Assembly: GCF_021028975.2 (NCBI RefSeq)
Contig: NC_059433.1
Span: forward strand, 51,026,143-51,090,000
Length of the DNA: 63,858 bases
Reading direction: 5' to 3'
Source: Sphaerodactylus townsendi
Lineage: Eukaryota
Both the position numbers and the translations under genes were made by a program. The notes under the pieces were generated by a model that worked only from the letters and a program-made list of their open reading frames with translations, did not search any database and had not been told where the DNA came from. Of the stretch, positions 3,733 through 61,339 are shown piece after piece. Position 1 is the stretch's first letter; each line of letters opens with the position of its first letter.

Positions 3733-3785
3733 AGAGACTTTACCACTAGAGATGCTCTTTATTATCAAATAGGATGATCCCAACT

Positions 3786-4165: not shown

Positions 4166-4189
4166 CAACACAGATTTAGACTGAAACCT

Positions 4190-4441: not shown

Positions 4442-5366
4442 CAGGGGCGTACCTAGGCAAACTGGCGCCCAGGGACAAAACCTGAGTTTGGCGCACCCCC
4501 CGCCTGGCGTATGGGTGCCCCCCCCCCCACCATGACCATGACAATGATTTTTTGTACCAGCTCACAAAACACCTCCCACTCCCAGCAAAACATACATGGC
4601 TCTCTCCCCACCAACTCTTTTCCTAATTTCCTAATCACAACAACCCTATGAGGTAGGTTGTTAGCCTGAGCAACAACTCCAAGCCATTTCTGAGGCACGC
4701 TGCACATTTTTGGGGCCCATAAAATTGAACCCCCAGAAGCAAAGGTCTCCAAACCTGGATGATATTACCAGGAGGCCCTCCTGGAGCCACCCTGAAAGTC
4801 TGGTGCCTCTATCTTCAAAAATGTGCAGCCTGCCTACACACTCAGAAATTCCCCATTGGCTACAATGGAGCAAAATCACTGCAAAACAAAGAATCTTGGG
4901 CACATTTCTTGGGGTGCCTGGAAGGGGTGTATTTTTAAAGCTAGTGACACCAAAATTTCAGGATATCATCTGTTAACTATTCTTATGATGCCACCCAAGT
5001 TTGGTGAAGTTATGTTCAGGGGGACCAAAGTTATGGTCCCTCAAATGGGTAGCCCCCATCTCCTGTTAGCTCCCATTGAAAACAATGGGAATGGGGGCAC
5101 CCCCTTTGGGGGTCCATAACTTTGCTGCCCCTGAACCAAACATCACCAAATTTGGATGGTATTATCAGGACAGTCTCTGGATGGTACCCTGAAATTTTGG
5201 TGTTGCTAGCCTTAAAAATGCGCCCCCTGCAGGCCGGAACGTGAAAAAACACTTTAAAACTTTAAAAACACACAAACAACCCTGAAATGTTGGCGCCCCC
5301 CCACGTGACTAAATGGGGGCGCCTGGGGACATAGGGTACCCCTGTCCCTAGGCAGGAACGCCACTG
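4442..5366. mobile_element. Non-autonomous hAT-type element (family A, 925 bp)
   Basis: TIRs CAGGGGCGTACCT / CAGTGGCGTTCCT; perfect 8-bp TSD ATGGTCTC (4434-4441, 5367-5374); internal long hairpin at about 4948-5202. Confidence 0.92.
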
Positions 5367-7761: not shown

Positions 7762-7799
7762 GTTGTGGATAATGATTAATGAATCCTTTATAGAGTCTG

Positions 7800-11291: not shown

Positions 11292-12265
11292 CAGTGAGAT
11301 AGGTATAGATTTTTTATGGGATAGGTTTGAGGGGAGGGGTCCTGCCCCCACCTGCCCGTGGGGGTGTGGCCACGCCTCCCCAAGCCATGCCCCCAGCCTC
11401 AGTGCTTATAAAAGCAGCTCCCCGAGGTTGGAGACAGCAGACTCCCCTGCCTCACCTGCCCGCCCCCCACTGGCTGGTCTCCCAGCCGTCAGCTGGCAGT
11501 CCCTTCTGCCCTCCCCTCCAGGCAGCAGCATAGCTAGGGAAAATGGAGCCCGATGCAGAATCTGAGTTTTGTGCCCCCCCCCCCCCCAATGGGCAGCCAC
11601 TGTGATGCTGGAATCCACCCCCAAACGGTATCATTTTCAATAGTGTTTAAACTAGGGAGCCCAGATTCTCCTTTTAAATCCACCTTAAAGGGAGAACCTG
11701 GGGTTCCCAGTTTAAAGAACATTGAAAGTGATGCTGTTTTGGGGTGGATTCTCCCCCACCCTGAAACAGCATCACTTTCAATGTTTAAACTGGGGACCTC
11801 AGATTCTCCCTTTAAATCCATGTCGAAGGGGGTGGATTTAAAAGGAGAATCTGGGGGAAATTTGGAGGGTGCCTGCTGTCAGGGGTGCAATTGTTAAGCT
11901 AGCAGAACCAAAATTTTAGGGTATCTTAGGAGATTCTCCTGATGATACACCCAGGTTTCATGAAGTTTGTTTCAGGTTATGGACCCTCAAAAGTGTCGCC
12001 CCCATCTTCTATCAGCTCCCATTGGAAACAATGGGGGATGGGGGCACCCCCTTTGAACCAAACGTCACCAAATCTGGGTGGTACCATCAGAAGAGTCTCC
12101 CAAAAATCCCTGAAATTTTGGTGCTGCTAGCCTAAAAACTGTTCCCCCTACAGGCCACAAAATGAAAAAACACTAAAAAATACAAAAAAGCTCACAAACG
12201 GGGCGGAGCTTCAGACATGTAATGGGGGGAGTTGAACCCGGGAACCCCCCTTACCTACGTCCTTG
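11292..12265. mobile_element. Non-autonomous hAT-type element (family B, 974 bp, composite)
   Basis: Termini CAGTGAGATAGGTA / CAAGGACGTAGGTA; perfect 8-bp TSD TCTACAGA (11284-11291, 12266-12273); multiple internal inverted repeats. Confidence 0.9.
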
Positions 12266-26779: not shown

Positions 26780-27540
26780 GCAACTCGTTATAAAGAGACT
26801 GTACCGAATCCGCTCAAAGTTGCTTCAAAGAAATGGGCTGGGCGTGATCCCATCCACTGCGTAAAACGAGAGAAGAGGCGGATCTTGAAGACGCTCGCTC
26901 AGGCTCTGGAGTTCACCCGCTTCTTCTGCACAGGCAGAGCGGCATCAGCGCCCTCCGCTTTCCCGCCACCAGGCGCTCTTCTCTTTTGGCCCTTGCACCA
27001 CGAGGTCTCTCTCCCGCCTCCGCGCCTACACTCACCATCTCCAATCCGGTTCCACGGCTGGGTGAAGCGCCCGTTGCAGTTCGTGTTTTGCGTCTCCAGG
27101 CAACGACGGCTGTTTCGAAGACGCGCGTGGGGCGCTCCCCCGCTCTCCTCCCCTGCTCCGGCTTGCCGCCCCCACCCCTTTTCCTTCAAGCTAGGCGGCA
27201 CGTTTAGCTCTTTCAAAGTAGCTTGAATACTGTAAAAGACTCTACTGCAAACTACTGCAAATATTTTTCTCGGCACTCGAATAACGGCGTTTTCCAGCGT
27301 TGCTGTTTCAAAGTATACAGCCATAATGTTACAAACCAACTGGAAGAAATTGCAATAAATAAAACGCCGCTCACTGCGATCACACAGGGAACGGGAATAA
27401 TTCAGGCACGTCCCGTGGTGTCCCTTTATGCTACAGACCCTGAGGTTGTCACTTAGCTCTCGACACCTCACTTTATGTTCCCGAAAGGGGGAAAATATTT
27501 CCGTATTGCTTCTCTGTGTTTGAAACATACCGCAGGCTCT
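26780..27540. promoter_or_regulatory. CpG island, candidate main CCDC178 promoter
   Basis: CpG-dense unique sequence with RFX-like GTCTCCAGGCAAC (27092-27104), CCAAT (about 27041) and GC-box CCGCCCC (about 27166), upstream of the CCDC178 exons. Confidence 0.55.
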
Positions 27541-27544
27541 AGAC

Positions 27545-28181
27545 CAGGGGTCCCCAAACTACGGCCCGGGGGCCAAATGTGGCCCCCTGAAGGCATTTAT
27601 CTGGCCCGCCAGGCATGGCGGCGATGGCTCCATTCATGTGCAGTGGGGGCTCGAGGGAGAGGAGGAACTGGCCCCAACGGCTGTTGATTGCAGTTACATG
27701 ATGGCACCCCCAAATCTCCATGAATTTTCTGACCCAGAGTTGGAAATCTTACATGTGGCAACGCCTGCTCCACCCTTCCCTCTCAGCTACTCCATGTGTT
27801 GCTCTCAGGCTTTCTGTTCCGCCTCACTCCCATTGGCATCAGCCAGGCTGGCGAATCGCTCGCTGGCTGCTAGGGAGGAAAGAACCCAGGAAGATACCTG
27901 ATCCTGGGTTAGATGGAATGCTTCATTGGGAAAGTTCTGCTTTTTTTTACAGGGGAAGGTATTCCACAGCCTCCCCAACAATATTTGGAGCCCACCCTGT
28001 ACTTGACATACTTTGGTCACTGTTCTAAAAATAGACCATGACAGAAAGGCTGAAAGGTGAAATCAAACATTTTACAATAATTTGTGCATAGGAATTTGTT
28101 CATAGTTTTTTTTAGTCCGGCCCTCCAACAGTCTGAGGGACAGTGAACTGGCCCCCTGTTTAAAAAGTTTGGGGACCCCTG
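27545..28181. mobile_element. hAT-Charlie MITE, OposCharlie1 (OC1)-like ends
   Basis: TIR CAGGGGTCCCCAAACT at both ends; TSD CTCTAGAC / GTCTAGAC (Charlie-type NTCTAGAN target). The right end GTCCGGCCCTCCAACAGTCTGAGGGACAGTGAACTGGCCCCCTGTTTAAAAAG is recalled as OC1-like. Confidence 0.85.
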
Positions 28182-29368: not shown

Positions 29369-30536
29369 CAGGGGCGTAACGAGGCAAACTGTAGCCCTGG
29401 GCAAAACCTGAGTTGGATGCCACACCCTCCCCCCCCCCCATGGGCGGCCACTCCACCATGACCAAATTTTTTTGCAACAGGACATTGGTGCCTGCAAGGG
29501 GTACATTTGTAGACATATCAACACCAAAATTTCAGTGTATCATCAAGAGACTGTCCTTATGCTGCTCCCCCAGGTTTGGTGAGGTTTGGTTCAAGGAGTC
29601 CAAAGTTATGGATTCCCAAAGGGGGTGCCCCATCCCCCATTGTTGCCAATGGGAGCTAATAGGAGATGGGGGCTACAGTTTTAAGGGTCCATAACTTTGG
29701 CCCCCCTGAACCAAACTGCACCAAACCTGGGGAGTATCATCAGGGCAGTCTCCTGATGAGACCCTGAAAGTTTTGAGACTGTGCCTTCAGAAATGTGCCC
29801 CCCCCCAGCCTGCAACCCCCATTGACAGCAATGTAGAAAACTCAATGCAGAACAAAGATTCTTGGGCAAATTTCTGGGATGTTCCTGCAGGGGGCGCATT
29901 TTTGGATGTATTGGCACCAAAATTTCAGGGTATCATCTGGAAACTGTCCTAATGGGACCCCCCAGGTTTGGTGCAGTTTGGTTTAGGGTCAAAGGGGGTC
30001 CCCATCCCCCATTCTTTGCTAAGGAGATGGGGGCTACCCTTTTGAGGGTCCATAACTTTGGACCCCCTGAACCTAACTGCACCAAACTTGGGGGTGCCAT
30101 CATGACAGTCTCCAGATGATACCCTGAAATTTTGGTGCTGATACGTCCAAAAATGCACCCCCTGCAGGAACATCCCAGAAATTTGCCCAAGAATCTTTGT
30201 TCTGCATTGAGTTTTCTGCATTCATTACCCATTACCCAGCGTATCATCAGGAGACTGTCCTTATGCTGCCTCCCAATTTTGGTGAGGTTTGGTTCAGGGA
30301 GTCCAAAGTTATGGACTCCCTGAACCAAACCTCACCAAACTTGGGGGGTAGCATAAGGACAGTCTCCTGATGATACGCTGAAATTTTGGTGCCGCTAGCC
30401 TAAAAACTGCGCCCCCTGCAGGCCAAAAATGGAAAACCACTAAAAATACCCAAAAGCGAACCCTGCATTTTGATGCCCCCCACAAGGTGGTGCCCTGGGC
30501 AGATGCCCACCTTGCCCAATGGGCATTATGCCCCTG
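29369..30536. mobile_element. Non-autonomous hAT-type element (family A variant, 1168 bp)
   Basis: TIRs CAGGGGCGTAA / CAGGGGCATAA; perfect 8-bp TSD CTTCAGGG (29361-29368, 30537-30544); three internal hairpins built from the same module. Confidence 0.92.

Positions 30537-38280: not shown

Positions 38281-38344
<64 letters not shown>
38281..38344. repeat. (AC)n microsatellite
   Basis: Direct observation. Confidence 1.
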
Positions 38345-38346
<2 letters not shown>

Positions 38347-38441
38347 ACTTCCCTTCCCCAGCCTTGCAAGCCTGGGGGAGGAAGGTGAGGGTGAATGCCC
38401 TGCCTGTTGGACTCATGCGCCCTCACCCCCTACCCTATCTA

Positions 38442-38956
38442 GGGCCCTTTCCGCACGTGCCAAATACAGCGCCCTGGAAACGGCAAAAACACCGTTCCCA
38501 GGGAGCTGTTCGCATGGGGGGCGCAGCTGCTTCGCAACCACGCCGCCCTCGCGCCTCCCCAGCGGCGCAATTACCATTTTGCCACTTCGTTTCCCGAGCG
38601 AGGTTGCTGGAAAACGGCGGCTTCCAGCCGCTGCCATGCAAACGGCAGCGGCTGGAAGACACCATCCCTCCCCCCTTTGCCCGATTGACCTACCTTCTCT
38701 GTGACCGTCCGGCATGTCGCCGAGGCCTGGGGACACGCCCCCCTGCCCTGCAACTCCGGAGCAGTGCCGCAGGGCAGGGGTGTGTGTCCCCTGGCCTCGG
38801 CGACGCGCCGGATGGTCGCAGGGAAGATACGTCAATCGGGCGATGGCACTCCGCGGTGCCATCTTCCCTTTCATTACCTGGACCGTTCGTGCGAACGGTT
38901 CCGGGGGGGTTGGGTCGGCGTACATGACCCCCAGCGTGGCCATGCGGAAACAGCCC
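38442..38956. mobile_element. CpG-rich PIF/Harbinger-like MITE with internal hairpin
   Basis: TIRs GGGCCCTTTCCGCA / GGGCTGTTTCCGCA; internal inverted repeat with arms of about 70 bp at 38679-38841; TSD unclear. Confidence 0.75.
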
Positions 38957-39529
38957 AAGTCTGTTGTATTACCCTACAGCAGGCTTTACTGCTAGTTCCA
39001 TGACAACACAACAGCAATTTATATGGAAAAAAATCTCTCAAAAAGCTCTATAATGGTACAACAAGGGGAAAGGGGCTGATTGCAAGGCTGCCTCTGGTGA
39101 TGGTCAGGCTAAATACCTGCAGCTGAGGAGGAACAAACGCTCAATCTAGATCATGTTCAGCTGATACAAATTTCCTCTCACCTCCATTTGCCTTCCATTT
39201 TAACAGAATTCTGCGCTGTTCTAAATCAAATTCTTCACTTTTCATTTGGAACAAAGGTAAATGAGAAGATAAAATAAAGTAGGAATTAATTCAGCGGAAG
39301 ATACGATAGTTTGATAGGCAGCCTTGTTTTTCCAGATGGTAGCTGAATTGTCCTGACCCTCTTCCTACACAACAAAACTTTCTGCTACATAGTACATTGT
39401 TAGAGATAGGGCATGTGTGGGTTAAGTTGAGAAGGGGGGGAGAAAATTAGAGTGATGATTGTTTTGAACTCAGTCTGGATGGAAAGGCAGTCTCTAGCAT
39501 TTGGTATCTTTTTAAAAAAAATAGAAACA

Positions 39530-45100: not shown

Positions 45101-46724
45101 GATTTGCATCATTCTGTGTTCATCCATCATTCACAAGAGTTTGGTCAATTAATCTGGTTTTGATTTCCATATAACATTTTTAAGGATTTGAGTTTTAAAG
45201 AATTCCATTATGTCCTTGTGCTCTTTTGGCTTTGCTAGCAGTGTAGTCTTAGCTATAATAAGTTATAATGTACTTTCTGCAGACAAAATAAATTTAGAAG
45301 AGAGATTTTTATAGTATTATTGTCTCTGTAAAGTACTCAATTTTGCATGCTTTCTGTCTGTTCTACTTGTTCCTAATTAATTCAAAAAGCAGACATGAAC
45401 CATGAAGATTATTCTTTACTGATTATATTTAGTAATTATGACTGATATATTTTTCTTAGCATAAATGATGATAGCATAATCACTTAATATAATGAAATAT
45501 TTTTAATAATTTTGCAAAACCAAATGAGTGGGCAAAACCAGGGGGCCATAAAATGATAGTAGCTTTTAAATACACATTAAAATTCTTTCATTTCCCAAAC
45601 CAGTCTTTCTTATAGGTTTGTATTCTAATCGGCAATTGTAACCTAATGGCCAGTTGTCTAAATGACTGTCCTATAAAGCTTACAGCCCACAAACCTTTAT
45701 TACTTGTTATATAATGTCCTGCATTCTGCCTTATAGCCTCTTTACATGACCTTATGATAACCTCAGGACTTAAGGAAAGGAATTGCTTCATCCAATCCCA
45801 GAATTTTAGATTAACCCTTTACTTTTAAAAATGTGATTGTTGGGTGATGTAAATTTTTAGAACCAACACTTTACATTTAACTGCACTGTTTCTGAAAGTG
45901 AAAGGCTAACATTACATGGATGCATTGTTATATTTCTTTATGTAAAGCTAGTAATATAAACACTGTTTTGTGATTTTGCATATACTTATACAATGATTTA
46001 CAGTCCTCCCTGCCACATCACTATTTTCTACTTCAGTTTTCTAGATCTTGGGTAGAAATCTCCCAACAGAACCCTGCTGCCGAGCAGAGGCATTTCTTGG
46101 CAAACTGGAGCCCGGGGACAAAACCTGAGTTTGCCCCCCCCCCCCGGTATGGCCGGCCATCCTCCCCCACCACAACCAAACAATTTTTTTTGCACCAGCT
46201 CACAAAACATCTCCTACCCCCAGCAAAACATACATGGTTCTCTCCCCACCAGTTCTCTTTACTAATTTTGTCCTCACACCAACCCTATGAGGTAGGCTGT
46301 TAGCCTGAGAAACAGCTCCAAGCCAGTGCAAGCGGGTATTAAGAATGTAAATCTCTCATAAATCACCCCCAACGCAGCTCTACTACAGCTGACAAGGTTG
46401 AGTGGTGTCGCCAATCTGCCTCCCTTCCTTGCCAGGCTGTATACAGAGTTATACTGGATCATGGGCTTAGATTGGAGAACTCTGTATAGGACAGCACTGT
46501 TAATTCCTGGTGAAGTTGTTCAGATAGTGTAGTATAGGGACAATCTTGGAGATTTAATTAAATACGATGTTTGCATAATATCCTGATCATATGAAGACTG
46601 TCAAGCATATCCTATGGAATGGTTGAATATGTTTAATTGTAGGAAGAGACTTTACTCACAAATGTTTCGTGCTTGACATGAGACAGGCTTAATTATCAAT
46701 TAACATTTATTATGTCAAAGCTAG

Positions 46725-46980
46725 GCCTTACAACAGAACTTCAACAAGAAAGAAAAGATTCTGAGAATTAACAAAGCTTGGCTACCAGTATTTTAAAACA
46801 CCAGAATCAAAGGCCAAGGTCATGCAAACCCCACCCACAATCCAATACTATCAACCACATCTTTGCATAGCAAGTTCCACCCAAACACTTACTGATTTGT
46901 TCCCCTCCCTGGGACATGGACAATATATACCCCACTAAAACATTTCCTTCTCACTGGACACAGTGTGTAACAGACTTCTA
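46725..46980 (+). mobile_element. Penelope-like ORF C-terminal and UTR remnant inside the cargo
   Basis: Translates NRTSTRKK/NFNKKEKILRINKAWLPVF-like sequence, recalled as the end of the Penelope GIY-YIG domain. Confidence 0.45.
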
Positions 46981-48173
46981 TTTCAGGTTCCTCTTCATAC
47001 CTTCTGTTAAACAGCCAGCCTTACACATTTTTGCTGGTTTAATTTTTCCATTTGTAAAATTAACATCATTCTCTTCCACACTAGTCTTAGTAAACAGGTT
47101 AGAAATGTTAAACAAAATTAGTTGGCTCTAATTACAGGGTCTTCATATTGTCACACACATCAGCTTCATCCACTCTAGATGCAACAGTGTACCTGACTCA
47201 ACCGCAGGGACACCTCTGCCATTTTACTGATGAAGTGCCTACAAATGCTGCAAGCGACTGATCCTGATCAGGACTGCTGCAGTGAAGGGAGCGGCTCACC
47301 CTTGACATTTTCAGTAGACCAAATCACTGGCCCTTGAGCTTTTGAAAATGTTGCGGGGGGGGGGGCAAGCTCCTGTCCTCCCCTTCTTTGTGGGTTTAAT
47401 CAAGTTTTAAATATGGGTGGGCTGTGTCCAGATTTTTTTAGTTCCTTTACAGAAACAGAAACACTTAAACAAACAAGTACATTAATAAGAATAGAAGGGT
47501 ACAGAAGGTCCAAGCCTCTGCCTGATACTGGACCCTGATATATCAACTGTAGCTGATTAACTCATACATTCTGAACAATAACATGAAAAGGTAAAACTAC
47601 TTGCATCAAACAAAGATGCAAACTCTGTTCTAGTATTCTTGTTTAATTGGTATAGGAGAATATCTCTCTTTGGAGAATCCTGGCTCATCCCTCAGCTTTT
47701 ATATAGTTCTACAAACAGGAACCTGTTCACTTTAAGTGGCAAGGTGAGGACACTAAGATGCAAATTATGTTGGCTGGAACTGGAGGCCAGATCAGCTGAA
47801 AAGAAACAGGACAGACCAGGCCAAGAGAAGAAAAGTAAAGATTTGAGAAAACAGTATGTGAATGGAAAAAGGACTGACAAAGAGAAGGTTTATGACCAAA
47901 CTTCACTGGGATCCAACAAGCTAGGGGGTGCTACGTCTTTTAAGTAAAATCTTTGTGCCTTTAATTTATTACACTGCTTTCCCAAAAATTGCAACCTGAA
48001 ATCTACTTAGTTGAAATTCCAAGAATTGAAACTGGAGCTTGTAAGCCTCTCCTCAGCTTGGCTTACCCGCCGCCTCACCCACTGCAAGCGCCACTGGCCT
48101 TTGGAATGGGTTTTCCAGAAGCAAGCGTCACTGGCAGCGGATGAGGCAGTGGGCTGCAACTTGATGGCACTCA

Positions 48174-48175
<2 letters not shown>

Positions 48176-48237
<62 letters not shown>
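48176..48237. repeat. (AC)n microsatellite
   Basis: Direct observation. Confidence 1.
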
Positions 48238-48241
<4 letters not shown>

Positions 48242-48936
48242 CGATTGCATTGCTTACTGGATATCCCATCCTGTTGATGGCACTGTTTGGCCTTGGGTAA
48301 TCCACCTCCAGCCTTAGTGAGAAAGGGGGAATATAAACTTTGCCAATAAATACATGAATGAATAAAACAGCAAGCCAAATTATACAAGGTGAGAAGCTGA
48401 CAACACTTCCCTGTCACTGCTTGAATTGTGGTGGCAAATGTGTGTGTGTGTGTGTGGGGTGGAGGCTTTCACCATAGGGCCTTTATGAAAACCCTGGGGT
48501 GGGTTAACAGCCAGGGGGAGATTGGCTTTCTAACATACCAAGACCTCTGATGGGCCACTGCCCCGGGAACCTTCCAGTGGTCAAGAGCTGAGCTGACTGG
48601 ACCACAGGGGGCTAAAGATGCCATTGCCAGACCCCAGGTGGGACCTGGAGATCCCCTGGAATGACAGCTCCTCTCCAGACCACGGAGATCACTTCTCCAG
48701 GAGAAAACAGATGCTTTGGAGGCTGGGCTGTGGGGCATTCACCAGTGGTCTGGTGGGAGGGCAACACTACTGGGGGGGGGCGGGCGCTGTGTCCAGGGCT
48801 GCTTGAAACACCAGCCCTGTTCCCAGCTTTCTGCAAAGGCTTAGCAGCTGAAGAGCTGTGGGTTCCCTTCCTGAAAGCTCGCTGCCCACCCCGTCTGCTC
48901 ATTTCAGCTGGCAAGAAGAAAGAGGAGGGGGGGAGT

Positions 48937-48968
<32 letters not shown>

Positions 48969-49610
48969 GCAGCCAAACAGGCTCTGAAGGAGCAACCCAG
49001 GTCGCCCTCCTCCTCCTCCTCCTCCTCCTCCTCCTCCTCCTCCTCCTCCTCCTCCGCAAGGACAAAAAGCTGTCGTCCCCTGCGCGTAATCCAGCCTTGC
49101 ACCTGCCCAGCACCTGCCTTGCTAGAGTCGAACTGGCCTAGCGAGGAGAGGGGGAGGAAAGATGGACCAGCCCAGCCATCGAGCTGACAAACCTCTCCTG
49201 GTTCGCTGTGGCTGCCCCTTGGAGTCGTCAAAGGGACGCCCGTGCGCTCTCTGGGCGCAGTGCCTGTGGGCTTGGTGAGCGACCGGCAGGTTGGGCGCCT
49301 GCTGCACTCCAGGGAAGAAGCGGCACCTGGTTTTGAAAGGAGGCAGCGGCAACACCAGGGAAGGGCCGAGGGGGAGGGGGCATGGTGGCTGGCCGAGTGC
49401 CCTCCACCCCTCATTGCCAGGCCGGTCTTCACTTACCTGGTCAGCAGCCAAGCGCACCAGCAGCTGGCCTCCAAACATGCCGAGGTGGGGCGCAGTGCAG
49501 AGAGAAAGCGGGGCAGGCGAGGAAGGAGGGGCAGGGCGGCTGCAAGGTGTGTGGGGGAGACGGGCTGAAGTCTGCAGGAAGCAAAAGCCTGCTTCTTCCC
49601 ACCGTGCCTG

Positions 49611-49651
<41 letters not shown>
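48937..49651. repeat. Cluster of (GA)n, (CCT)n and (CTG)n microsatellites in GC-rich cargo
   Basis: GA at about 48937-48967, CCT at about 49006-49055, CTG at about 49611-49651. Confidence 0.95.
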
Positions 49652-49652
<1 letters not shown>

Positions 49653-50046
49653 GCTCCAGGGGCTGGCTCGACTTCCCTTCCCTGTGCCGGCCAGTCAGCC
49701 GAGGAGAAGGCAAGGCATGCTGGGTCGGAGGGAGGCGGAGCTCCCCGGCTTACTGGGAGCTGGGACTTGGAGCACACTACACAATGAGACTGGGCCAGTG
49801 GGCCACCATCCAGAGTGGGCGGGGCTGAGTTAGCCTGAGCCCAGTGGTGGTGTAAAGCTTGCTGGCAAAATGCTGCAGTTTGTGGGGGGACATTTTGGCG
49901 CCCCCCACGTGACAGAAATTGTTGCGCCCGGGGACAAGGGGTACCCCATGTCCCTAGGCAAATTCGCCACTGCTGCCCAGCTTACCTGGGGTCCTTGGGC
50001 AGGTGAGAGGCCAAGGAGGCGATAAGGCTGCTGGCAGGAGCCAACA

Positions 50047-51381
50047 TGGGAGAGATGGTAAGATGTTGCTTTTACATATACCAAAGAGGTGTTACTTTAA
50101 ATATATATGGGACAATGACAATGATTGCCTTATAAGTTATAAAGGAGGTATCATTAAGTGTTTTTATAAAGTGTAAGACTATTAAATATTGTAAATATAT
50201 TGTATGTAAATATGGAACTGAGAAAGAAAAACAAGACATATGTACAGTAGATGGAAGGGGTGTCAGAAAATGTAAGTTTGTAGGAGACATTTATTGCACG
50301 CATAGAGGCTGACTGACCCTGAGCAGAGTTGTAGAGATAAGATGTCAAAAGAAAGTATTGGCCTGGCTTCAAGATTAGGAAAAGTTAATTGGAGATGGGT
50401 ATGATGCTTATCCGGGCTTATCACATCCCATTTGAAGTTGGTCAATGACTAATTGGGATAGCAGAAGAAAAAGAGAACATAGTGACCTGTACAGAACACC
50501 AGCTCTGAGATAATAAGCAAAGAGAAGAATTTGCAAACAGAAGAAACAGGGGTCAAAAGTTTAGTGGGGAATAGGTAGCACAAAAGTTTATAAAATTATG
50601 TTGCTTTTATATTGAAGCTAATCATGAAACTTTAAGAATATGTTAATCACTCATGTTCAATGTATGTATCCTATGCTATTGGCATTGAATGTTTCATATG
50701 AATCTTTGTATAATCCTTTAATATGGTCAAAAGGAAGTGTTCCTCTCTCAGTTTGAAGTGTAAAATAGCTAAAAAGGCCTCTAGATAATAACTGTTTATC
50801 CTGAATATTGATTTATATCTTATATATTAACCTAGATATAAAGAAACACTTTAAAGTCTTTTTCTAAGATGCTTCTGAAGCCTGGATTCAATAGTCAAAG
50901 GAATGCAGGTCAAGAAGACCTAGGTTCTTGTGCCAAGAAGGCACCTGCTGATAAGAAGGCCCCTAACAAGCTTGTGATCGTGTTTTCAAAGCAGAAGAGT
51001 GGGTCAAGAAAAACTAGGTTCTTGTGCCAAGCACTAATGAAGGTTTGACAGCTAAGACAAACCAAAAATTAATTACAGGAAATGACCATATGGAGATGTA
51101 TTAATTGGAGAAGATACCACCTGGTATATGACATACCAGTAGTATGCCTAGATGAATTGTAATAGGCTGGGCCCTCTCATCTCATAGCCAATGGAGAGAT
51201 GAGGGAGGGATTGGGTGGTCCTGAAAAAGTAATATAAACTGCTGCAGAACAAAGGAACTGTGTGTCCACCACTGGGTGAGCACCCGGGCTTGCAAGACCA
51301 TAAACTAATAAAAGGTTTGTTAACTGCTTCATCAAATTGATCCAGAGTGTTTTTAGAGTTCTTAGACTAGCGTTTCTTACA
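50047..51381 (+). mobile_element. Solo LTR (about 1335 bp, ERV/Gypsy type)
   Basis: TG...CA ends (TGGGAGAGA / TTTCTTACA); 4-bp TSD AACA (50043-50046, 51382-51385); CCAAT near 51188, TATAAA near 51233, AATAAA near 51307; it interrupts a continuous GC-rich flank. Confidence 0.75.
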
Positions 51382-52954
51382 AACAGAGGCCAAAGGGAGG
51401 AAGGGCCAGAGGGAGGAAGGGTCTGACCCTGGGAGAGGGGCTTGGGCTGGAAACTGGGAGGGGGGATATTTTACTCATTTTCTCATATTGTGGAGGGTGC
51501 TGTGCCTCTAACCCCTGCAATGTGGAAGGGAGGACTGCAATTTTTAAAAGGGGCCATCCCAGCTGCCTTTAATGTAAAGATGGGAATAGTGTTAGAGATC
51601 CATAGCAATGAGTGTTAGAGATCCATAGCAATAAACTGAGAAAGGAAGAAAGTGAAAGAAGAGATATTCCCATTCAAAGAAGGTATGTACAACCAATTAG
51701 AGGTTCAAAGGTTCAAAAGCTTTCTTCTAGAGTAAACTCCACCTCTTTGTTATTTCAATATAGTGGACATGGTTAGGATTTTATGATTCTTTGGAGAAAT
51801 ATAGTCCCTAGAAGTTCAGAGTGACTGGGACAACTGTATAAAAGTATAAAGGCGTAACCACCAAGACCTTAACTGAGCTCCCATTTTGTTCCTAAAACTT
51901 GTTTTCTAAAAATAATATTGGAGCCCCTCCCCCATGTGTTTCTATGACCATCAAGTGGGAAAAGAATTGTGTGGTTTCATACCAAAACATCTATTTTGAA
52001 ATTGTAAAGGAACTCCCTTAGCAGGAGTTCCTTTCCCTATAACCAGGACATTTCTACGACCATTTGGAAGATTCAGTGTATTTCTGTGGTCACTCAAAAG
52101 GAAAACTAGCATTGATTGGACTTGACATTAAGACATTTGCTTGAACATCTGGCAATACTTCCTAAGAGCCACTGGCTCCACAAAACCCTCTCTGTGGACA
52201 GAGATTTTATGTGGCTATTTAGAAGCATCAATGCATTTCTATGACTATTCAGAAAGGATAGCAAACAGCTATTTATTACCCAAAAATGTAATCACTTTAA
52301 GATGTTCTTGAACTCCATAATAGGAAGAAGCCCGGTCTTAGCAGTGCCCTATCTATTTTTTAAACTGTAGAAGATTTCTGGCAATCTTAGAATTAACTAT
52401 ACAGCTATTTGGGCCCATACAATCCAAAACCAAGAACAAAATTCACTTATCTTTTACTAGGATCAACCAAATTGGCATAAAGCAGTATTTATTTTACTGT
52501 GATTATGTTGTTGGTTCTAATAAAATGTGTTGCATGGATTTTGTTCTTGATTTTGAATCTTAGAACTGGCACTTCGAATGTCTTTGTGTTTAATCCCATG
52601 CACTAAAGAAGGATTTGATATTCATATTTTGTAATCATGCTGTGAATTATGCTATATTTTTATGTGGAACCATTGTCTGTCTGCCTTACGGATTTGATAG
52701 ATTGAATGCTATGCTCCCCCCCCTCCCTCTGTGTCCACATTTCTTCTGTTGAATGTGAGAGTGGTTTGGAACAGTGTTGCATTATGTAAATTTATGATGT
52801 GGTGTAAGGAAAACAGCACACCTGTCAACAAGGGTGGGTAACTACAGGATGAATCCAGAACAACACGAACAACTTGGATAGATGAATCTGTCATTAATTA
52901 CATGTACATAGTTCTTCAGAATGCATACCCCTAGCTAGACAGATTGCTCTGGAA

Positions 52955-53155
52955 CTGGAATGACAGCCCCCCTCCCTGAGTGGAATGATGGTTGCTGGGG
53001 AAAAAAGTATTTTGTGACTGAAATGACAGCCCTCAAAGTGGAATGACAGTCCCCAGAACAGATAATCTGCTCTATGAATGGAATGACAGCCCCCAAAAGC
53101 AAAGAGGGTATCCAGGAATATGATCAGTTTTCTGGGAATGGAATGACAATTTCCA
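52955..53155 (+). repeat. Degenerate GGAATGACAG repeat array
   Basis: Several GGAATGACAG units; the reverse complement CTGTCATTCC recurs at about 54180-54292 and 57468-57680. Confidence 0.7.
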
Positions 53156-54292
53156 GAGAGATGGTCTCCTGTGATTAAAATCAATGCTGTGCAACTGCAC
53201 AACTGTAATCATAAACCTTAGAGTGGAGTGAAATACCTTACATTTTAATTAATACTTCTGGAGTTTGCATTGTTATCCCCAACAAATCAGACCATCACAA
53301 CAGTTCTCTGCTTGTCAGCCGTTCTGTTCCTTTCTAGAGTCATGGTGTTGGTGTCAGCCACCTCATTCTGCTCTGTTGACAAATATAAATCTTGCCCTTC
53401 CTTTTCTTCCTTAGAGCCTGCATTTAAGTCTCCTTTCTTCCTGTCCTCCAGGTTCCTGTTATGTGCCACATCCTGCTTGAGCTCCTTGGGCACTTTTGCC
53501 CACTATGGTGTCCTGTAACCAACAGCACCCATCTCAGTCTCCCTGCAAAAAACTTCATCCTAATGCATTTTCATATATGAAGATTTTAATATCTAAATCT
53601 CTGTATAGCATGTCATTTGCCCATCTTGACAAATACTCTGACTGTTTCTGGCTGTCCAGTATCTCGGGCACAGCTGAATGGTTCTCTGCTTCCTGCCTTC
53701 TCTTTCACACCCCTGCCTTCTACCTCTCAATACGCACTCTTACCCAATGATTACTATGGCAGTTACAGAAGGATTCAGAGAAGAAAATTTACTGATACAG
53801 TATTAATTGTTGAATGAAACTGGTATAATATTATCTCTAATGTACACACTCTTTGCAAACAAAATACATGGATAGTTTGGTGGTGGTTGATGACATACAA
53901 GCTGCATACCACTGCCTGCAGTTGCAACAGAATAACATGCAGTCTTCTGATATGAAGTTGCCTTGCAATGACTTTTCTGAGCAGGTTGAATATCTGCTGG
54001 TATCTTTATCAGCTAACAACACAAGATACTATAGTAGAGGTTGTTCAGGTATGTGTACTTTGGGAACCATGGAAAGACGCTGATGGTATAATTTCTGGTA
54101 GGAATCTTGATCCTGTTTTTGTTCCAGTCCCAAGACACTGGTTGCATTCCTAGAAATAATCAGTACAGGGAGCGGGGGGAATCATTCCATTCTCAGAACA
54201 GGTTATCTAGTTTCAGGGACTGTCATTCTACTCTTAGGCCTCTCATTTCAATTGCAAAACGCTCCTGCTACTCCAAGAGGCTGTCATTCCAT

Positions 54293-57200
54293 CAGGGGTG
54301 TAGCTAGGAAAAATGGAGCCCGGGGCAAAATCTGAGTTTTGCCCCCGCCCATGTAGACGACCACCCTCCCCAACCACAACCAAACAACAATTTTTTGCAC
54401 CAGGTCATTTCAGTCACCATCACATTGTAGAACATGCCCCAACTCACAAATCTGAACACAGCAATGGTTCATGCCACACAGTGGAAATATTGTTTTGACA
54501 TTTTCAAAATGTTTTATTACTGCTGAGAAAAAATATATAAAAATAAAACAAAAGGGCCCAAAAAGGAACTTCTAAATGGCTTTCATTTGTTTTCCTGCAT
54601 GACACTAACCCTAACCCTGTGATCCATGGGCAGGGAGGTGTGTTGGGGATGGAGGGGGGGGGGAGGCTGGCAGAGCTTGCAATTTGTGGGATGTGTTTGT
54701 ATTGCAAGCTGTTCTGGAGGACTCAGATGGTCAAAAAGATGGCAGTACAATATTTTAACAGTACAAATCAATGTATAAATATTATATGTACTTAATCAGA
54801 AGCAGATAAACACACTCCGACACTATCACTCAGGATCAGACAAAATCTTGATTTCAATACTAATGTCTTAACACAGTCCACTATTTTCTTGATGACATTT
54901 CTGAACACTGGTTAACCTCAAAGGCCAAAATATGGGGTATAAATACTTCCACAAAAAACAACCCTGGGCAAATACAGCACCTTCACCACAAGGTAAGGGG
55001 TGCTGTCTTTCCGAGTGTGTCCATGACCCTTCATATCCCTCTTAAGATCAGCATATGTTAAAGTTAATTGTAGACTTTCCTTCTTTTTATCACTTTTCTA
55101 GAGCAGCAGGTCCACAATGATGCTTACTGAACTGATGCAAAATCACCTTCTAAAGGTGTTTTGGAAGTGAGGCTAAGGGCACTATCACACATGAGAATAA
55201 TGCATTTTCAAGCCACTTTCAATGCACTTTTCAGCTGGATTTTACTGTGCGAAAGAGCAAAATCCACTTGCAAACAATTGTGAAAGTGGATAGAAAATGC
55301 ATTATTCTGGAAATGCCAAAGTGCCCCAAGAACAGTTCATACACTTCACGAAACCAACAGGATAGGCATTTAGCTAGCCAAAACACAACACATACGCACA
55401 CAATGGATTGACCAAATTGCCAATTTATCAGCACATCACAAAAAGAGAAAGACTGAAAAACCAACTTTAAAAAATACAGATAAAAACTCTCCTGGAGGCA
55501 CAGCACTATGAAAAACCACATGGACCCACACAGGAAGCAGCCTTATACCAAGCCAGACCTTTTGGTCTGTTGGGGTCAGCATTGCCCACTCTCACTGGAC
55601 ACAGCTCTGCTGGGTCTCAGTTGGAAAGTCTTCCACATAACCTCCTACTTGATTTTTTAAACTGGAGATGCCAGCAATTGAACTGGGGACTTTCTGAATG
55701 CCAACTAGATGCTCTTCCACTGAGTCATGCCCCCAAACTTCTCTCCTTCCCTCCCTTCCATAAAGGCAGAGGACTCCACAGAATCCTGACTTCTGCACAC
55801 TTCTGATTGGGGGCAGGGGTGTGTGTGGCTTTTCTGAATGTGCAAAACACCTTCCTGAGGGGAAAGTGGAAATATTTTATATTACAACCAATTGGAACAG
55901 TGTGTTTCTTTTTTACTTACATTTTTTTACCTTTCCTTTTTAAGGGAAACACGTCTATTTATTTGAACCCTTATTTATGTTGCTTACAAAGTGTAGCCCT
56001 GTGTGGAATGGGGGGAGAATGAAAGGAGAAAAGCTGACCCCCTCTTAACAGCCCAGCTCAATCTTAAACACACTTACTTGAGAGTAACTGCTACTGAATT
56101 CAATGGGATTTACTTCAGAGTATACGCTTCCAGGTTTGCACTTCAAGAGGTTCTTTTTAGTTGACTAGAAGAGGGATTTTTGGGAGGCAACTGTTTAATT
56201 GCAGTGGTTGAGTTTACCTTTGATGGGGATGGGTGAGTTCTGAGATAAAAACTGAAATCCCAATTCCAGAAAATGTGAAGTCCTGCTGCCCCAAACAGTC
56301 CAGAGTCCCTTTACTCACAAGCCGGTCCTGCTGAGCTCAGTCGAGCAAGCCCCCCCCCCTCTTGTCTGAGCAGCCCATGCACTCCGAGCAAGTCAGGGAG
56401 GTGAGAGGAAGAAGAGGATCGTTCAAAAAAAGTTTAAACAAAAAAAAAGGCCAAAACAAAAGCAGAGGGCAGCTCTGGGAAAGGACAGGAAAGGGGAGTT
56501 TCTTTCTCCCCTGCCCCCAAGATCTACCGTGAAAGGCGAAGGAGCAGGGAAGGGGAGAAGTCCAAAGCCCTTTGCTCTGTGCAACGTCCACAACAGCCAA
56601 GACACAAAACAAGGCACCAACTTCTGCAAGTAGCAGCAGGGAAACTGCGCGGAGGGAGGCTCGTGGGTCCCGGCAAATGGAGGGAAGCCTGGACGCCCCC
56701 CCCCTGCATTCTCACACACATGCGCTCACGCTCACACACCCTCCTCCGGCTGAATCTCGCCCCCAACCAGATCCAAATGCATCTCTGGCGCAAAACTGAA
56801 AGGGCTCCTTCCCCACTGTGGTCAGCCTCCCCTCCACTTGCTACCAGCACAACCTGGGAGACCCTCGCTTGGAAATGCAGCCCTTCTCCCCATTGTTCCG
56901 TCTGGACGCCCCCTCACCGTGTGCTGCGCGCCTCTCAGCCCTTGATGGGGGCGGCAGTGGCAGGGCTGGCAAACAAGTCAGTGCTGTGGCCGCTGGAGGG
57001 TCTGAGCCATTAAAAGTGCTGGGAGGCGGCGGCGGCGGCGGCGGCCACAGGCGGAGAAGGGAAGCGGTGGGAGCGGAGGGGGAGCGGCGGGGAAGGGTCG
57101 CCATGGCTAGGGCGAGCTCGCTGGCTCCCATAGGGAAAGTGGAGCCCAGGCGAGAAATGCAGGGCGGGGACGAAGAGGAAAGCCTCGCTGGTGAGAGAAG

Positions 57201-57467
57201 CAGGAAGTGGTCACTGCTGCTGCTCGTTGGCTGTCTCCCTCTTCCGCCCACCCCCAGCCGGCTGCCTGGAGGGGAGGCGGGGAGAGCACTCCCTCGGCTG
57301 GAAGCCAAAAGGCGCAGGCCTCCTCTCCGGCATCGTGCAGCCAAACCAAGCCACGCCCCTCCTCCTTCCCGGAAGTGTGCAGGGAATTTTTCCGCCCTCC
57401 ACGTGACCTTGCAAGCCTGCGCCCGGGACAAGCCGCCCCGGATGTCCCCGTTGGCGCTTTGCCACTG
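54293..57467. mobile_element. Large cargo-carrying hAT-type element (family A termini, 3.2 kb)
   Basis: Termini CAGGGGTGTAGC / CAGTGGCAAAGC; perfect 8-bp TSD CATTCCAT (54285-54292, 57468-57475). The left about 110 bp and right about 75 bp (CCACGTGAC...GCGCCCGGGACA...TGTCCC...GCCACTG) are homologous to family A ends. Confidence 0.88.
55177..55326. mobile_element. Palindromic 150-bp Harbinger-like MITE inside the cargo
   Basis: GGGCACT...AGTGCCC ends, TAA / CAA flanks, mostly self-complementary. Confidence 0.65.
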
Positions 57468-57864
57468 CATTCCATTCTGGGGCCTCTCGTTCCAGGCCCA
57501 GAATATTGATTCTATTTGTGGGACCGTCATTCCACTCTGGGAACTGTCATTCCAATCACAGAAACCTTTTCTTACTCACATGTACCACCACTCCATTCTG
57601 AGGCTTGTTATTCCAGGTCCACAACACTTAAGCTGTTCCCAGGAATCATCATTACACCCTGGCAGCTGTCATCCCAGTCCCAGAAAAGTCTATCTGGGCC
57701 AATTGACCATCGTTCAAAATCCATTCTGCATTTTCACTGCAGCTTTTGGGTGTTGTAATATTTCAGTGGAGCCGACTGAAGCCAGTTGGCATTGTTTGTT
57801 CCCATTATATCCACTGGGCATTCCCACCTCTCCCATTGTCTCCAACATGTCAATTATTTTAGGA

Positions 57865-58060
57865 ATAAGATTGCCAGTCTCCAGGTAGAGCCCGGAGATC
57901 TCCTGCTATTACCATTGATCTCCAGTTGATCAAGATCAGCTTCCCTGAAGAAAATTGGCTGCTTTGGAAGGCGGATGATGTAACATTATATCTGCTGAGT
58001 CCCTCCCCTCCACAGACCCCTGCCAGTGCCTTCCCAAGACTTCATTCCCAAACTCTCCAG
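57865..58060 (+). repeat. Unclassified interspersed repeat
   Basis: ttgccag...ccaggt...ggagatc...ctccag...agatca...gaaaa...gctttgga, shared with about 48622-48740. Confidence 0.6.
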
Positions 58061-59699: not shown

Positions 59700-60232
59700 G
59701 AGGCAATATGCTATCATTAAAAAAAAGGCACAGGCGCGTTGCACATTGGGGCATGTAGTCTAGTCTTAATTGTTCCCCTTTATGTGTAAAACTAAAAGGG
59801 GAGTGGGGAAGGGAAAGAAATAGAGGGGACGGGAGTGGGTTGAAGAGAGGGTCTCCAGAAGCTCTCGCGAGATCTTTGAGAGCTCTTTCTTTTCTCTGTG
59901 TCTCGTGCGGTTTGCTCGCGAGCACGGCTGCCTTGGCTGGGATGTTTTGTACAGTCGCCATTCCCTTGTGTGACGTCATAGTGCATTGTTGTGACTTGCG
60001 TAACGGAGCATCCCTCAAGCTGTCAGCTGTGTCGCCGCCGCCGCTGCGGGAGCGCGAGCCCCAGCCGGCCCAGCCCTCCGCCTCCTTGTCTTCCTCCCGC
60101 CCCTCCCTCAGGGGTTCTAGAACTCCACGTCACCGTATCATTGTCTGTGCGGGACCCTCCGGCTCCCCCTCCCTCCCCCGTCCCTGCACGTTCCATCCCG
60201 CCCCCATAGAACCATCTCAATGAGATGCAAAC
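59700..60232 (+). promoter_or_regulatory. ASXL3: ASXL3 CpG-island promoter and 5' UTR
   Basis: CpG-rich; TCTCGCGAGA (59863-59872), GCTCGCGAGC (59914-59923), CRE TGACGTCA (59971-59978), TTGCGTAA (59996-60003). Confidence 0.8.
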
Positions 60233-60286
60233 ATGAAAGACAAGAGGAAGAAGAAGGACCACACCTGGGCCGAGGCTGCCCGCCTG
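60233..60286 (+). CDS. ASXL3: ASXL3 first coding exon (start of HARE-HTH/ASXN domain)
   Basis: MKDKRKKKDHTWAEAARL then CTG|GTAGGT donor; matches the recalled ASXL3 N-terminus MKDKRKKKDRTWAEAARL. Head-to-head with CCDC178 as in mammals. Confidence 0.95.
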
Positions 60287-61339
60287 GTAGGTGCGACCAG
60301 AGCTTTGTGCGCGGGGGGCCGGCCCGCCCGGTTGCTGTTCCCGGGGCAAGTCGGGGAGGAGCCTAGCGCAGCCTGCTCCGGACTCGAGTCCTTTGCATTG
60401 TTGCGGTCGGTAGGGGATGCTGGAGTGACTGTGCAAGGCTGGACGTGGGGCAGAGTCAGTTCTTCTCGAGCTTCACGGCAAAGCTAGAGATGCGGGATGG
60501 GACTGGAAGCGGCGGCGGCTGCGTTCTCATGGAACGGTGTTCCGTGCAGAAGTCTTGGCATCGGGGGTTCTGTGAGAACTACTTTGTTCAGGGACTGTCT
60601 GCATGCCACGTCCTGCAGTGAGGTAGTGAAAAGACCAAGAGGTTACTCCGGGGGCCGGTGGGAGTGAACCTACTGAACACAATGCGGGGATCCCTGGGTG
60701 GTGTTGTGTATAAGTCACAGTGAAGCTCCCTTCCCTTCCCTCACCTGACCTAACCACGACCACTTGGGATTCTCCTGCAATAAGCTGAAAGCTGGAGGGC
60801 ATTATCCCCCCCCCCCCGCCCACGAGCAGTTTCTTATGTGTGGAGTTGTGTGGACTTATCCTGGGACCACAGATAAGCCACTCCCTGCTCACCCTGATTG
60901 TGACCTCTCCATAATGATTTCATACATCATCAGAATCAGGGCATATGTAAAGCAGACTGAAGTAGGGGTATTGGTTTCATCCTGAAGACAGTGTGATCAT
61001 TTCATTTCTATGTGCATGCACACAGGAGAATGGGCACCTCCCTTTGTAATGAAATATGTAGAACCGAGCAATTTCCTGGATAATAGTACAGAAAATGTTA
61101 TTGGGTGTGTATATACGTGTGTGTTTGCATATGCATGTTTGTGTGTGTGTGAATGAATTACTCAGATAAACTTCTGTAGCATGTACATGTCCAATAAGTA
61201 TTTACATCTTTTAACAAGCATGTGAGGCATTGCACTCAAGACTCCTTTGTAGCATATATGAGTGTAATATTTGTAACCTCTGCACCCCTCTTCTCCCCCC
61301 AACAAAAATAAAGGGATGGGGTAAAAGCCAGGAGCCAGA

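What the first reader, a model, noticed from the sequence alone, without database searches (positions are those of the whole stretch)
46085..57467. Candidate Pack-hAT system: non-autonomous hAT ends mobilising host promoter, first exon and intron cassettes
Seen: four elements share the same termini (4442-5366, 29369-30536, 46085-49972, 54293-57467). Each has an 8-bp duplication exactly at the terminal inverted repeats (8/8, 8/8, 7/8, 8/8). The two short ones carry a hairpin module. The two long ones carry different 3-4 kb cargos with the same layout: a GC/CpG-rich promoter-like block next to the right end, then a minus-strand splice donor, then AT-rich intron-like DNA with old repeats running to the left end. 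Established: 8-bp TSDs and CAG-starting TIRs mark hAT transposons, and gene-fragment capture is well known for plant Pack-MULE and Pack-CACTA elements. Inference: this family captures 5' ends of host genes and disperses ready-made promoters. I am not aware of this being described in squamates but cannot check the literature. No transposase is present in the window.
Basis: partly seen in the sequence, partly recalled or inferred. Interest (0 to 1): 0.88.

Follow-up and report, generated by a model that had tools for sequence, protein, structure and literature searches.

The report
Cargo-carrying hAT transposons in a gecko
Two 3-4 kb jumping-gene copies in this gecko sequence share their ends with small hAT transposons but carry unrelated GC-rich non-coding DNA; one jumped in recently and has tens of copies, but nothing shows that the cargo is a stolen gene promoter.

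Summary
Four elements (4442-5366, 29369-30536, 46085-49972, 54293-57467) share homologous left ends (about 110-240 bp) and right ends (about 85-95 bp). Their 8-bp target-site duplications sit exactly at those ends (8/8, 8/8, 7/8, 8/8).

The two long elements, E3 and E4, share nothing beyond those ends. They carry no transposase relic.

New evidence for E4 (54293-57467):
- A single-copy contig of a related species joins 54284 directly to 57468. That is an exact empty site with one duplication copy.
- The whole 3.2-kb interior is multi-copy: about 14-20 near-identical copies, and 30-95 copy-equivalents at 80% likeness or more.

So E4 is a recently mobile, amplified, non-autonomous hAT element moved as one unit.

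The claim that the cargo is a host promoter, first exon and intron is not shown:
- No donor locus was found.
- No protein matches any reading frame tested.
- The "splice donor" hexamers occur at chance frequency.
- E3's GC block is CpG-depleted (o/e 0.32).
- RNA from the related species gives depth of only 0-5 and no splice joints.

Pack-type hAT elements in animals are already catalogued (PMC8277862). The first-stage reader of this scan flagged similar hAT elements with CpG-rich cargo elsewhere in this genome; those notes are unchecked.

The parts
4442..5366 (+). E1, a short non-autonomous hAT element with an internal hairpin module. Its duplication ATGGTCTC lies at 4434-4441 and 5367-5374.
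29369..30536 (+). E2, a short non-autonomous hAT element with nested hairpin modules. Its duplication CTTCAGGG flanks both ends.
46085..49972 (+). E3, a 3888-bp cargo-carrying element. Its duplication is CTGCCGAG (46077-46084) and CTGCCCAG (49973-49980), 7/8.
46085..46325 (+). E3 left end, 82% identical to E1 4442-4686.
46326..48499 (.). E3 AT-rich interior (GC 0.42, CpG o/e 0.17). It has no Pfam hit and no match elsewhere in the window except a (GT)n tract.
48500..49888 (-). E3 GC-rich block (GC 0.62, CpG o/e 0.32) with CAG/GAG triplet runs. A GTAAGT hexamer on the minus strand starts at 49436.
49889..49972 (+). E3 right end, 81% identical to E1 5284-5366.
54293..57467 (+). E4, a 3175-bp cargo-carrying element. 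Its duplication CATTCCAT lies at 54285-54292 and 57468-57475. It is absent from the orthologous site of organism C.
   Evidence: X6 record 9 joins 54284 to 57468
54293..54407 (+). E4 left end, 77-80% identical to the E3 left end. This end type is extremely abundant: summed depth is 1.2-1.4 million against 87 for single copy. Contigs diverge exactly at 54293.
54408..56299 (.). E4 AT-rich interior (GC 0.41, CpG o/e 0.09), multi-copy as part of the unit. It holds an old palindromic repeat and a stretch of higher copy number, listed below.
55194..55308 (.). Palindromic core (53-nt arms) of a very abundant repeat, nested in the E4 interior.
55560..55770 (+). A stretch that looks like a tRNA-derived SINE. 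That identification is from my memory of squamate SINEs and was not tested. Local depth is raised (20,632 against about 3,000 in neighbouring bins).
56300..57375 (-). E4 GC-rich, CpG-island-like block (GC 0.62; 56850-57467 has GC 0.67 and CpG o/e 0.64). A GTGAGT hexamer on the minus strand starts at 56318. An ATG in a gccATGg context lies at 57104.
57376..57467 (+). E4 right end, 71% identical to the E3 right end over 96 bp. It shares the GGGACA..TGTCCC palindrome and the GTCACGTGG motif.
11523..12265 (+). A decayed fifth member: left end plus hairpin module. Its right boundary and duplication are not resolved.

Best explanation
E3 and E4 are non-autonomous hAT transposons. They use the same left and right end sequences as the short hairpin-carrying elements E1 and E2, but the hairpin module is replaced by two unrelated non-coding interiors of about 3.6 kb and 3.0 kb.

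Shown:
- The ends and duplications.
- The two interiors are unrelated and hold no transposase relic.
- E4 was inserted as one 3175-bp unit after the split from a closely related gecko, about 1.4% diverged in the flanks.
- The whole E4 unit exists in about 14-20 near-identical copies, plus older ones, in two species.

Inferred:
- A hAT transposase encoded elsewhere moves them in trans by cut-and-paste.
- The interiors entered an internally deleted element by template switching during repair of the excision gap, the Pack-TIR route. That route is known to favour GC-rich DNA.
- The E4 cargo looks like ordinary genomic DNA: an old palindromic repeat and a SINE-like stretch lie beside a CpG-island-like block.

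Not shown: that the GC blocks are promoters and first exons of host genes.

My odds:
- Cargo-bearing non-autonomous hAT elements: 0.95.
- E4 recently mobile as a unit: 0.9.
- Interiors copied from non-transposon genomic DNA: about 0.6.
- Interiors taken from gene 5' ends: about 0.3.
- Acting as dispersed promoters today: about 0.1.

The overall confidence of 0.6 is for the whole statement, including the inferred genomic origin of the cargo.
For: - Duplications lie exactly at homologous ends.
- E3 equals E1's ends (82% and 81%) with a different interior.
- E3 and E4 share only 119 bp on the left and 96 bp on the right.
- Empty site: X6 record 9 (2430 bp, depth 36, 15 mismatches in 1041 bp) runs 53700-54284 and then directly 57468-57923. 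X1 records 1 and 8 cover both filled junctions with no mismatches.
- Copy number: interior unitigs have depth 1247-1739 against 86-87 for the flanks in X1, and 391-506 against 36 in X6. Summed depth is raised evenly across 54564-57299 and falls to near the flank level (222 and 626, against 2,827-8,267 inside) just outside the element.
- No Pfam domain reaches its cut-off in 30 stop-to-stop pieces of 55 aa or more.
- GC-rich capture by multicopy Pack-TIRs and template-switch models are described in PMC8277862.
Against: - No donor locus was seen, so the interiors could be transposon-specific sequence of unknown origin.
- Single-copy contigs at about 85-88% identity over 55303-55669 and 56538-57415 in both species (records 4-6, 12, 14, 15) may be the donor, or just old family copies. 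I could not see whether they carry hAT ends.
- No contig was shown that bridges cargo and ends in other copies, because unitigs break at the repeat boundary. That every cargo copy is flanked by these ends is therefore inferred from the depth profile.
Confidence: 0.6

Rival explanations
1. These are ordinary non-autonomous hAT families, and their interiors are the transposon's own non-coding DNA. For example, they could be the 5' promoter, leader and intron region of autonomous relatives left behind after the transposase was deleted. Under this reading the GC block next to one end, facing inward, is the element's own promoter and not a captured host one.
For: - In both elements the GC block abuts the same end and any transcription would run inward, as expected for a transposon's own promoter.
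- The E4 unit behaves as a normal multi-copy family in two species.
- No host protein or donor was found.
- A follow-up on another hAT element of this genome concluded that it was an ordinary element (s1-740239).
Against: - The E3 and E4 interiors are unrelated to each other even in the GC block.
- No transposase relic was found in 30 reading-frame pieces.
- The E4 interior holds an old palindromic repeat and a SINE-like stretch, as ordinary genomic DNA does.
Confidence: 0.3
2. The long interiors arrived after insertion. On this reading a short element like E1 sat at each site and was later filled by nested insertions of other repeats or by local rearrangement, so the hAT ends never moved the cargo.
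For: The E4 interior does contain at least one nested repeat, 55194-55308. E3 was not tested with reads.
Against: - For E4 the related species lacks the whole 3175 bp plus one duplication copy, not just the interior.
- The entire interior is multi-copy at even depth.
- Neither interior shows the ends, duplications or reading frames of another transposon.
Confidence: 0.05
3. The GC blocks are resident CpG islands of this intergenic region, and hAT-like ends happen to lie on either side.
For: The window has three other CpG islands outside hAT elements: 26600-27400, 38300-39100 and 59700-60800.
Against: - E4 is absent from the orthologous site of a related species and is multi-copy.
- Both elements have duplications exactly at ends fixed by homology.
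Confidence: 0.02

Closest known systems
Pack-TIR elements of animals, including Pack-hAT (Tan et al. 2021, PMC8277862); multicopy example Pack-hAT-N8_XT in Xenopus tropicalis, which carries 291 bp of the CAPSL 5' UTR
   Same: hAT ends and 8-bp duplications around non-transposase DNA. The element is multi-copy with recent transposition and is absent from the orthologous site of a relative. The cargo is GC-rich, as that paper reports for multicopy cases.
   Different: - A parental locus is the defining feature there and was not found here.
- The cargo here is 3-3.6 kb, against a median of 224 bp there.
- Copy number here is in the tens, against 3-5 there.
- No squamate is named in that paper's main text.
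Pack-MULEs and other Pack-TYPE elements of plants (PMC8903248)
   Same: Non-autonomous elements with inverted-repeat ends that amplify foreign GC-rich DNA, often taken from gene 5' regions.
   Different: A different superfamily and kingdom. Plant cases have identified parental genes and often carry several gene fragments; here no gene fragment is identified.
Helibat Helitrons of vespertilionid bats, which captured promoters, 5' UTRs and first exons (PMC4224331)
   Different: Rolling-circle mechanism, with no inverted-repeat ends and no duplications. Donor genes and chimeric transcripts were demonstrated there and not here.
Ordinary non-autonomous hAT families (hAT-N type consensus entries, Ds-like deletion derivatives)
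   Same: Shared ends, trans-mobilisation, internal sequence unrelated to the transposase, tens of copies.
   Different: The interior here is long, and one end of it looks like a CpG island. Two members of the same end-family carry unrelated interiors.

Membership tests
hAT superfamily (non-autonomous member) | 8-bp target-site duplication directly flanking the termini | tested here: met
   8/8, 8/8, 7/8 and 8/8 at boundaries fixed by homology.
hAT superfamily (non-autonomous member) | Short terminal inverted repeats starting with CAG | tested here: met
   All eight termini read CAG...CTG. TIR match is 11/14 in E1 and E2 and only 8/14 in E3 and E4 (my count). The ends are homologous across members.
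hAT superfamily (non-autonomous member) | Duplication consensus nTnnnnAn | tested here: inconclusive
   T at position 2 in 3 of 4 and A at position 7 in 2 of 4. Four sites are too few.
hAT superfamily (non-autonomous member) | A cognate transposase with a hAT dimerisation domain, carried by an autonomous element with the same ends | not testable with these tools
   None was found in the two interiors tested. The rest of the genome could not be searched.
hAT superfamily (non-autonomous member) | Mobility: a clean empty site with one duplication copy in a relative | tested here: met
   E4 only: X6 record 9 joins 54284 to 57468. E3 was not tested.
Pack-TIR / Pack-hAT | An internal region that is not transposase and not the family's usual interior | tested here: met
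   No Pfam hit. The interiors are unrelated to E1, E2 and each other.
Pack-TIR / Pack-hAT | A parental locus elsewhere in the genome, without the ends, homologous to the cargo | tested here: inconclusive
   Single-copy contigs at about 85-88% identity exist in two species (records 4-6, 12, 14, 15). Their flanks were not visible, and there is no genome search tool.
Pack-TIR / Pack-hAT | Cargo derived from a gene (exon or UTR) | tested here: not met
   No protein match for the GC-block reading frames tested. The untranslated or non-coding origin of the cargo could not be tested.
Pack-TIR / Pack-hAT | Multicopy with independent insertions | tested here: met
   E4: 14-20 near-identical copies by unitig depth in X1 and 11-14 in X6. 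The flanks of the other copies were not seen.
CpG-island promoter with first exon | GC of 0.55 or more and CpG o/e of 0.6 or more over 500 bp or more | tested here: inconclusive
   E4 56901-57500 meets it (GC 0.67-0.68, o/e 0.62-0.66). The E3 block fails it (o/e 0.32-0.47).
CpG-island promoter with first exon | Transcripts that start there and splice at the proposed donor | tested here: not met
   RNA runs X9 and X10 of organism C give depth 0-5 over the cargo and no joint at 56318. Only 6% and 19% of those runs were read, and the tissues are unknown.

The most novel reading that the evidence does not exclude
An active hAT lineage in geckos repeatedly picks up kilobase pieces of CpG-island promoters, with first exon and intron, from host genes. 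It then amplifies them to tens of copies, seeding the genome with portable promoters. That would be far larger and more prolific than any animal Pack-TIR described so far.
Probability: 0.2. Interest if true: 0.7.

Novelty: new member of a known kind. Interest (0 to 1): 0.4.

Why it matters
Two things make this worth noting.

First, it gives direct evidence that a 3.2-kb DNA transposon moved recently in a gecko lineage, because the site is filled in one species and empty in a close relative. A working hAT transposase was therefore available not long ago, which is uncommon among amniotes.

Second, one end-family carries unrelated kilobase cargos with CpG-island-like blocks. If donors at gene 5' ends were found, this would be the largest and most amplified Pack-type capture known in an animal. 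It would also be a natural system for studying how transposons spread promoters.

As it stands, it is a well-documented member of a known kind.

Tried and rejected
- **Proteins for the GC blocks.** Three word-index searches found nothing: the E4 minus frame 56844-57467, the E4 plus frame 56438-57010 and the E3 plus frame 49188-49565. The first was swamped by low-complexity words. A full HMMER pass over 1.84 billion representatives with the E4 frame that holds the ATG at 57104 also found nothing. A blank says little about untranslated exons.
- **Transposase relics.** Pfam on 30 stop-to-stop pieces gave only sub-threshold noise.
- **RNA families.** Rfam on the whole window gave no family.
- **Remote homology between the E3 and E4 interiors.** Relaxed blastn and nhmmer found none.
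- **Other cargo copies or donors inside the window.** None found.
- **Earlier findings by sequence.** Blank three times.
- **Splice donors as evidence.** Rejected, because GTRAGT occurs at chance density.
- **A composite of two complete small elements.** Rejected, because there are no internal ends in E3 or E4.
- **E3 on reads.** Not possible. Reads were laid on E4, which I chose for its intact duplication and better-kept CpG content.
- **Other copies of the E4 family with their flanks.** No tool here searches a gecko genome.
Full report
**1. The observation**

- Each starts with CAG and ends with CTG. Each is flanked by an 8-bp direct repeat exactly at those letters: ATGGTCTC, CTTCAGGG, CTGCCGAG/CTGCCCAG and CATTCCAT.
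- The left ends are homologous over about 100-245 bp. E1 against E3 is 82% over 248 columns, E3 against E4 is 80% over 108, and E2 against the others is 72-75%.
- The right ends share a common plan over about 85-96 bp: CAGTGGC, a GGGACA..TGTCCC palindrome, GTCACGTGG and an A-run. E4's right end is the most diverged, 71% to E3.
- Homology fixes the boundaries, so a matching 8-mer there is not a search artefact. A blind scan of 20 shuffled windows for any CAG/CTG pair with inverted-repeat ends and a duplication gave 0-2 hits each.
- E1 and E2 carry long self-complementary modules. A fifth, decayed member starts at 11523.

**2. What the long elements contain**

E3 has E1's ends: 46085-46325 matches E1 4442-4686, and 49889-49972 matches E1 5284-5366. 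A different 3.56-kb interior lies between them. The E3 and E4 interiors share nothing detectable, even under relaxed blastn and nhmmer.

Neither interior has a long open reading frame. Thirty stop-to-stop pieces of 55 aa or more gave no Pfam hit above cut-off, so no transposase relic is seen. Rfam finds nothing.

Both interiors have a GC-rich block (GC 0.62) against the right end, and the rest is AT-rich (GC 0.41-0.42). The blocks differ in how well CpG has been kept:

| Block | CpG o/e |
|---|---|
| E3 48500-49888 | 0.32 |
| E4 56300-57382 | 0.51 |
| E4 56850-57467 | 0.64 |
| Three CpG islands elsewhere in the window | 0.67-0.87 |

The minus-strand GTAAGT at 49436 and GTGAGT at 56318 exist. 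GTRAGT runs at 0.36 per kb per strand in this window, and the elements hold several each. They therefore carry little weight.

**3. Reads: E4 is young, mobile and multi-copy**

Public runs from four coded organisms hold this DNA. I laid 53700-58000 on two DNA contig sets (X1 of organism A, X6 of organism C) and two RNA runs of organism C, at 80% likeness.

(a) Empty site.
- X6 record 9 is a 2430-bp contig at single-copy depth 36. It matches 53700-54284 and then, without a break in its own numbering, 57468-57923, with 15 mismatches in 1041 bp.
- It therefore lacks exactly the 3175-bp element plus one copy of CATTCCAT, which is a clean empty site.
- X1 records 1 and 8 cover the two filled junctions with no mismatches. 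X1 may be the sample the window was assembled from, so it is not independent support.
- hAT excision usually leaves a footprint (established knowledge). I therefore read the clean site as never occupied: E4 inserted after the two lineages split, at about 1.4% flank divergence.
- The insertion split one unit of a loosely repeated GTCATTCCAYTCTGGG motif. The long, near-identical flank matches make a false joint unlikely.

(b) Copy number.
- Interior unitigs in X1 have depths 1739, 1380 and 1247, against 87 and 86 for the flanks. That is about 14-20 copies sharing identical 31-mers.
- In X6 the depths are 506, 391 and 435 against 36, or about 11-14 copies.
- Summed depth at 80% likeness or more is 2,827-8,267 across the interior in X1, or 32-95 copy-equivalents, leaving out three bins that hold higher-copy repeats (54564-54707, 55140-55427 and 55572-55715).
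- It is raised evenly over the AT-rich and GC-rich parts and falls to near the flank level (222 and 626) just outside the element. The repeating unit is the whole element.

(c) The ends.
- The left-end type is enormously abundant. Summed depth is 1.2-1.4 million, on the order of 10^4 copies.
- Hundreds of contigs diverge exactly at 54293 with no consensus beyond it, which confirms the terminus.
- The right-end type is far rarer, about 400 copy-equivalents.

(d) Diverged paralogues.
- Several contigs at single-copy depth match 55303-55669 and 56538-57415 at about 85-88% in both species (records 4-6, 12, 14, 15).
- One shares a 142-bp gap (56832 to 56975) in both species.
- They could be the donor locus or old family copies. 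I could not see their flanks.

(e) RNA. Depth over the cargo is 0-5, there is no joint at the proposed donor, and no pile-up of starts. Only 6% and 19% of the two runs were read. About a dozen family copies would contribute to this depth, so expression is at background level in those samples.

**4. What the cargo looks like**

The E4 interior holds two repeat-like stretches:
- 55194-55308 is the palindromic core of a very abundant repeat, whose genomic copies continue differently on both sides (loose ends at 55194 and 55309).
- 55560-55770 resembles a tRNA-derived squamate SINE. That identification is from my memory and was not tested. It has locally raised depth.

Old repeats embedded in a young, nearly uniform family suggest that the interior was ordinary genomic DNA when it was acquired. 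A long-lived master copy could also have collected them.

No reading frame of the GC blocks matches any protein, in three word-index searches and one full HMMER pass. If there is an exon, it is untranslated or too short to detect. The best E3 candidate codes for only 14 residues before the GTAAGT.

**5. Mechanism**

Shown: the ends, the duplications, the clean empty site and the multi-copy unit.

Inferred from established hAT biology: cut-and-paste by a transposase supplied in trans, which recognises the shared terminal and subterminal sequences.

How the cargo got in:
- E3 keeps E1-like ends on both sides and has no internal ends. A composite of two neighbouring small elements is therefore unlikely.
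- Replacement of the internal module during repair of the excision gap, with a switch to an ectopic template, fits better. This is the gap-filling or FoSTeST route proposed for animal Pack-TIRs.
- The same paper notes that multicopy cases favour GC-rich DNA (PMC8277862).

The common layout, with the GC block at the right end and facing inward, rests on two elements and has about a 1 in 4 chance of coincidence.

The main rival is that the GC block is the transposon's own promoter region, left after the transposase was lost. Against it stand the lack of any homology between E3 and E4, the absence of transposase relics and the embedded old repeats. I give it 0.3.

**6. Comparison with what is known**

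Tan et al. (PMC8277862) catalogued 370 Pack-TIRs in 100 animal genomes.
- 208 of them are hAT.
- Only four are multicopy: three in a frog and one in an alligator.
- One of the frog cases is a 291-bp 5' UTR piece carried by hAT-N8_XT.
- The median cargo is 224 bp.
- No squamate is named in the main text.

E4 fits the pattern of a multicopy Pack-hAT but lacks its defining proof, a parental locus. It equally fits an ordinary non-autonomous hAT family. I therefore file E4 as a non-autonomous hAT element, with membership features met. It is only a candidate Pack-hAT, because the parental locus is inconclusive and the gene origin is not met.

**7. Earlier notes of this scan**

Other first-reader notes on this same gecko genome describe hAT elements with CpG-rich or promoter-like cargo: s1-740878, s1-740356, s1-740441 and s1-743286. 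One follow-up, s1-740239, judged another cargo-carrying hAT element to be ordinary. All are unchecked by me and are not counted as evidence. They are a reason to run the genome-wide test. That the genome is a gecko I take from s1-740228.

**8. Limits**
Its age, copy number and orthologous site are untested. Its 7/8 duplication and low CpG suggest it is older than E4.
- No tool here searches a gecko genome, so donors and other copies with their flanks could not be fetched.
- The N run at 6655-6822 was left alone.

**9. Verdict**

This is a new member of a known kind. Interest is 0.4. It would rise to about 0.7 if donors at gene 5' ends and recurrent capture were shown, which I put at about 0.2.

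Noticed in passing
window 27545-28181: A 637-bp small element of a different hAT family. It has perfect 14-bp inverted ends CAGGGGTCCCCAAA and the duplication CTCTAGAC/GTCTAGAC (7/8). It lies just right of a CpG island.
   Followed up: no
window 11523-12265: A decayed fifth member of the same end-family, with a left end and a hairpin module. No matching duplication was found.
   Followed up: partly
window 55194-55308: The palindromic core of an extremely abundant repeat. Summed contig depth is about 8 million against 87 for single copy, and it is also the most abundant thing in the RNA reads. Genomic copies continue into GCATGTGCGGAAGGGGCC-type arms.
   Followed up: no
window 54160-54292 and 57468-57700 (also 52894-53202): The DNA around E4 holds an irregularly repeated motif, GTCATTCCAYTCTGGG. 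E4 inserted inside one unit. Tandem Repeats Finder reports no regular array.
   Followed up: partly
window 26600-27400, 38300-39100, 59700-60800: Three CpG islands (GC 0.53-0.60, CpG o/e 0.67-0.87) that are not bounded by ends of this hAT family. Their genes were not identified.
   Followed up: no
window 7200-7900, 16700-17400, 20800-21600: GC-rich but CpG-poor blocks (GC 0.56-0.62, o/e 0.11-0.24) of unknown nature.
   Followed up: no
window 4635-4686 and 46270-46325: The inner part of the left end shared by E1 and E3 carries AACCCTATGAGGTAGG..CTGAGA. From memory this motif is common in squamate SINEs. A 25-bp piece also matches 24859-24883.
   Followed up: no
window 54409-54621: Other genomic copies of the E4-type left region carry internal deletions here. 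Joints 54468 to 54616 occur in 7 contigs of X1 and 2 of X6, so shorter subfamilies exist.
   Followed up: no
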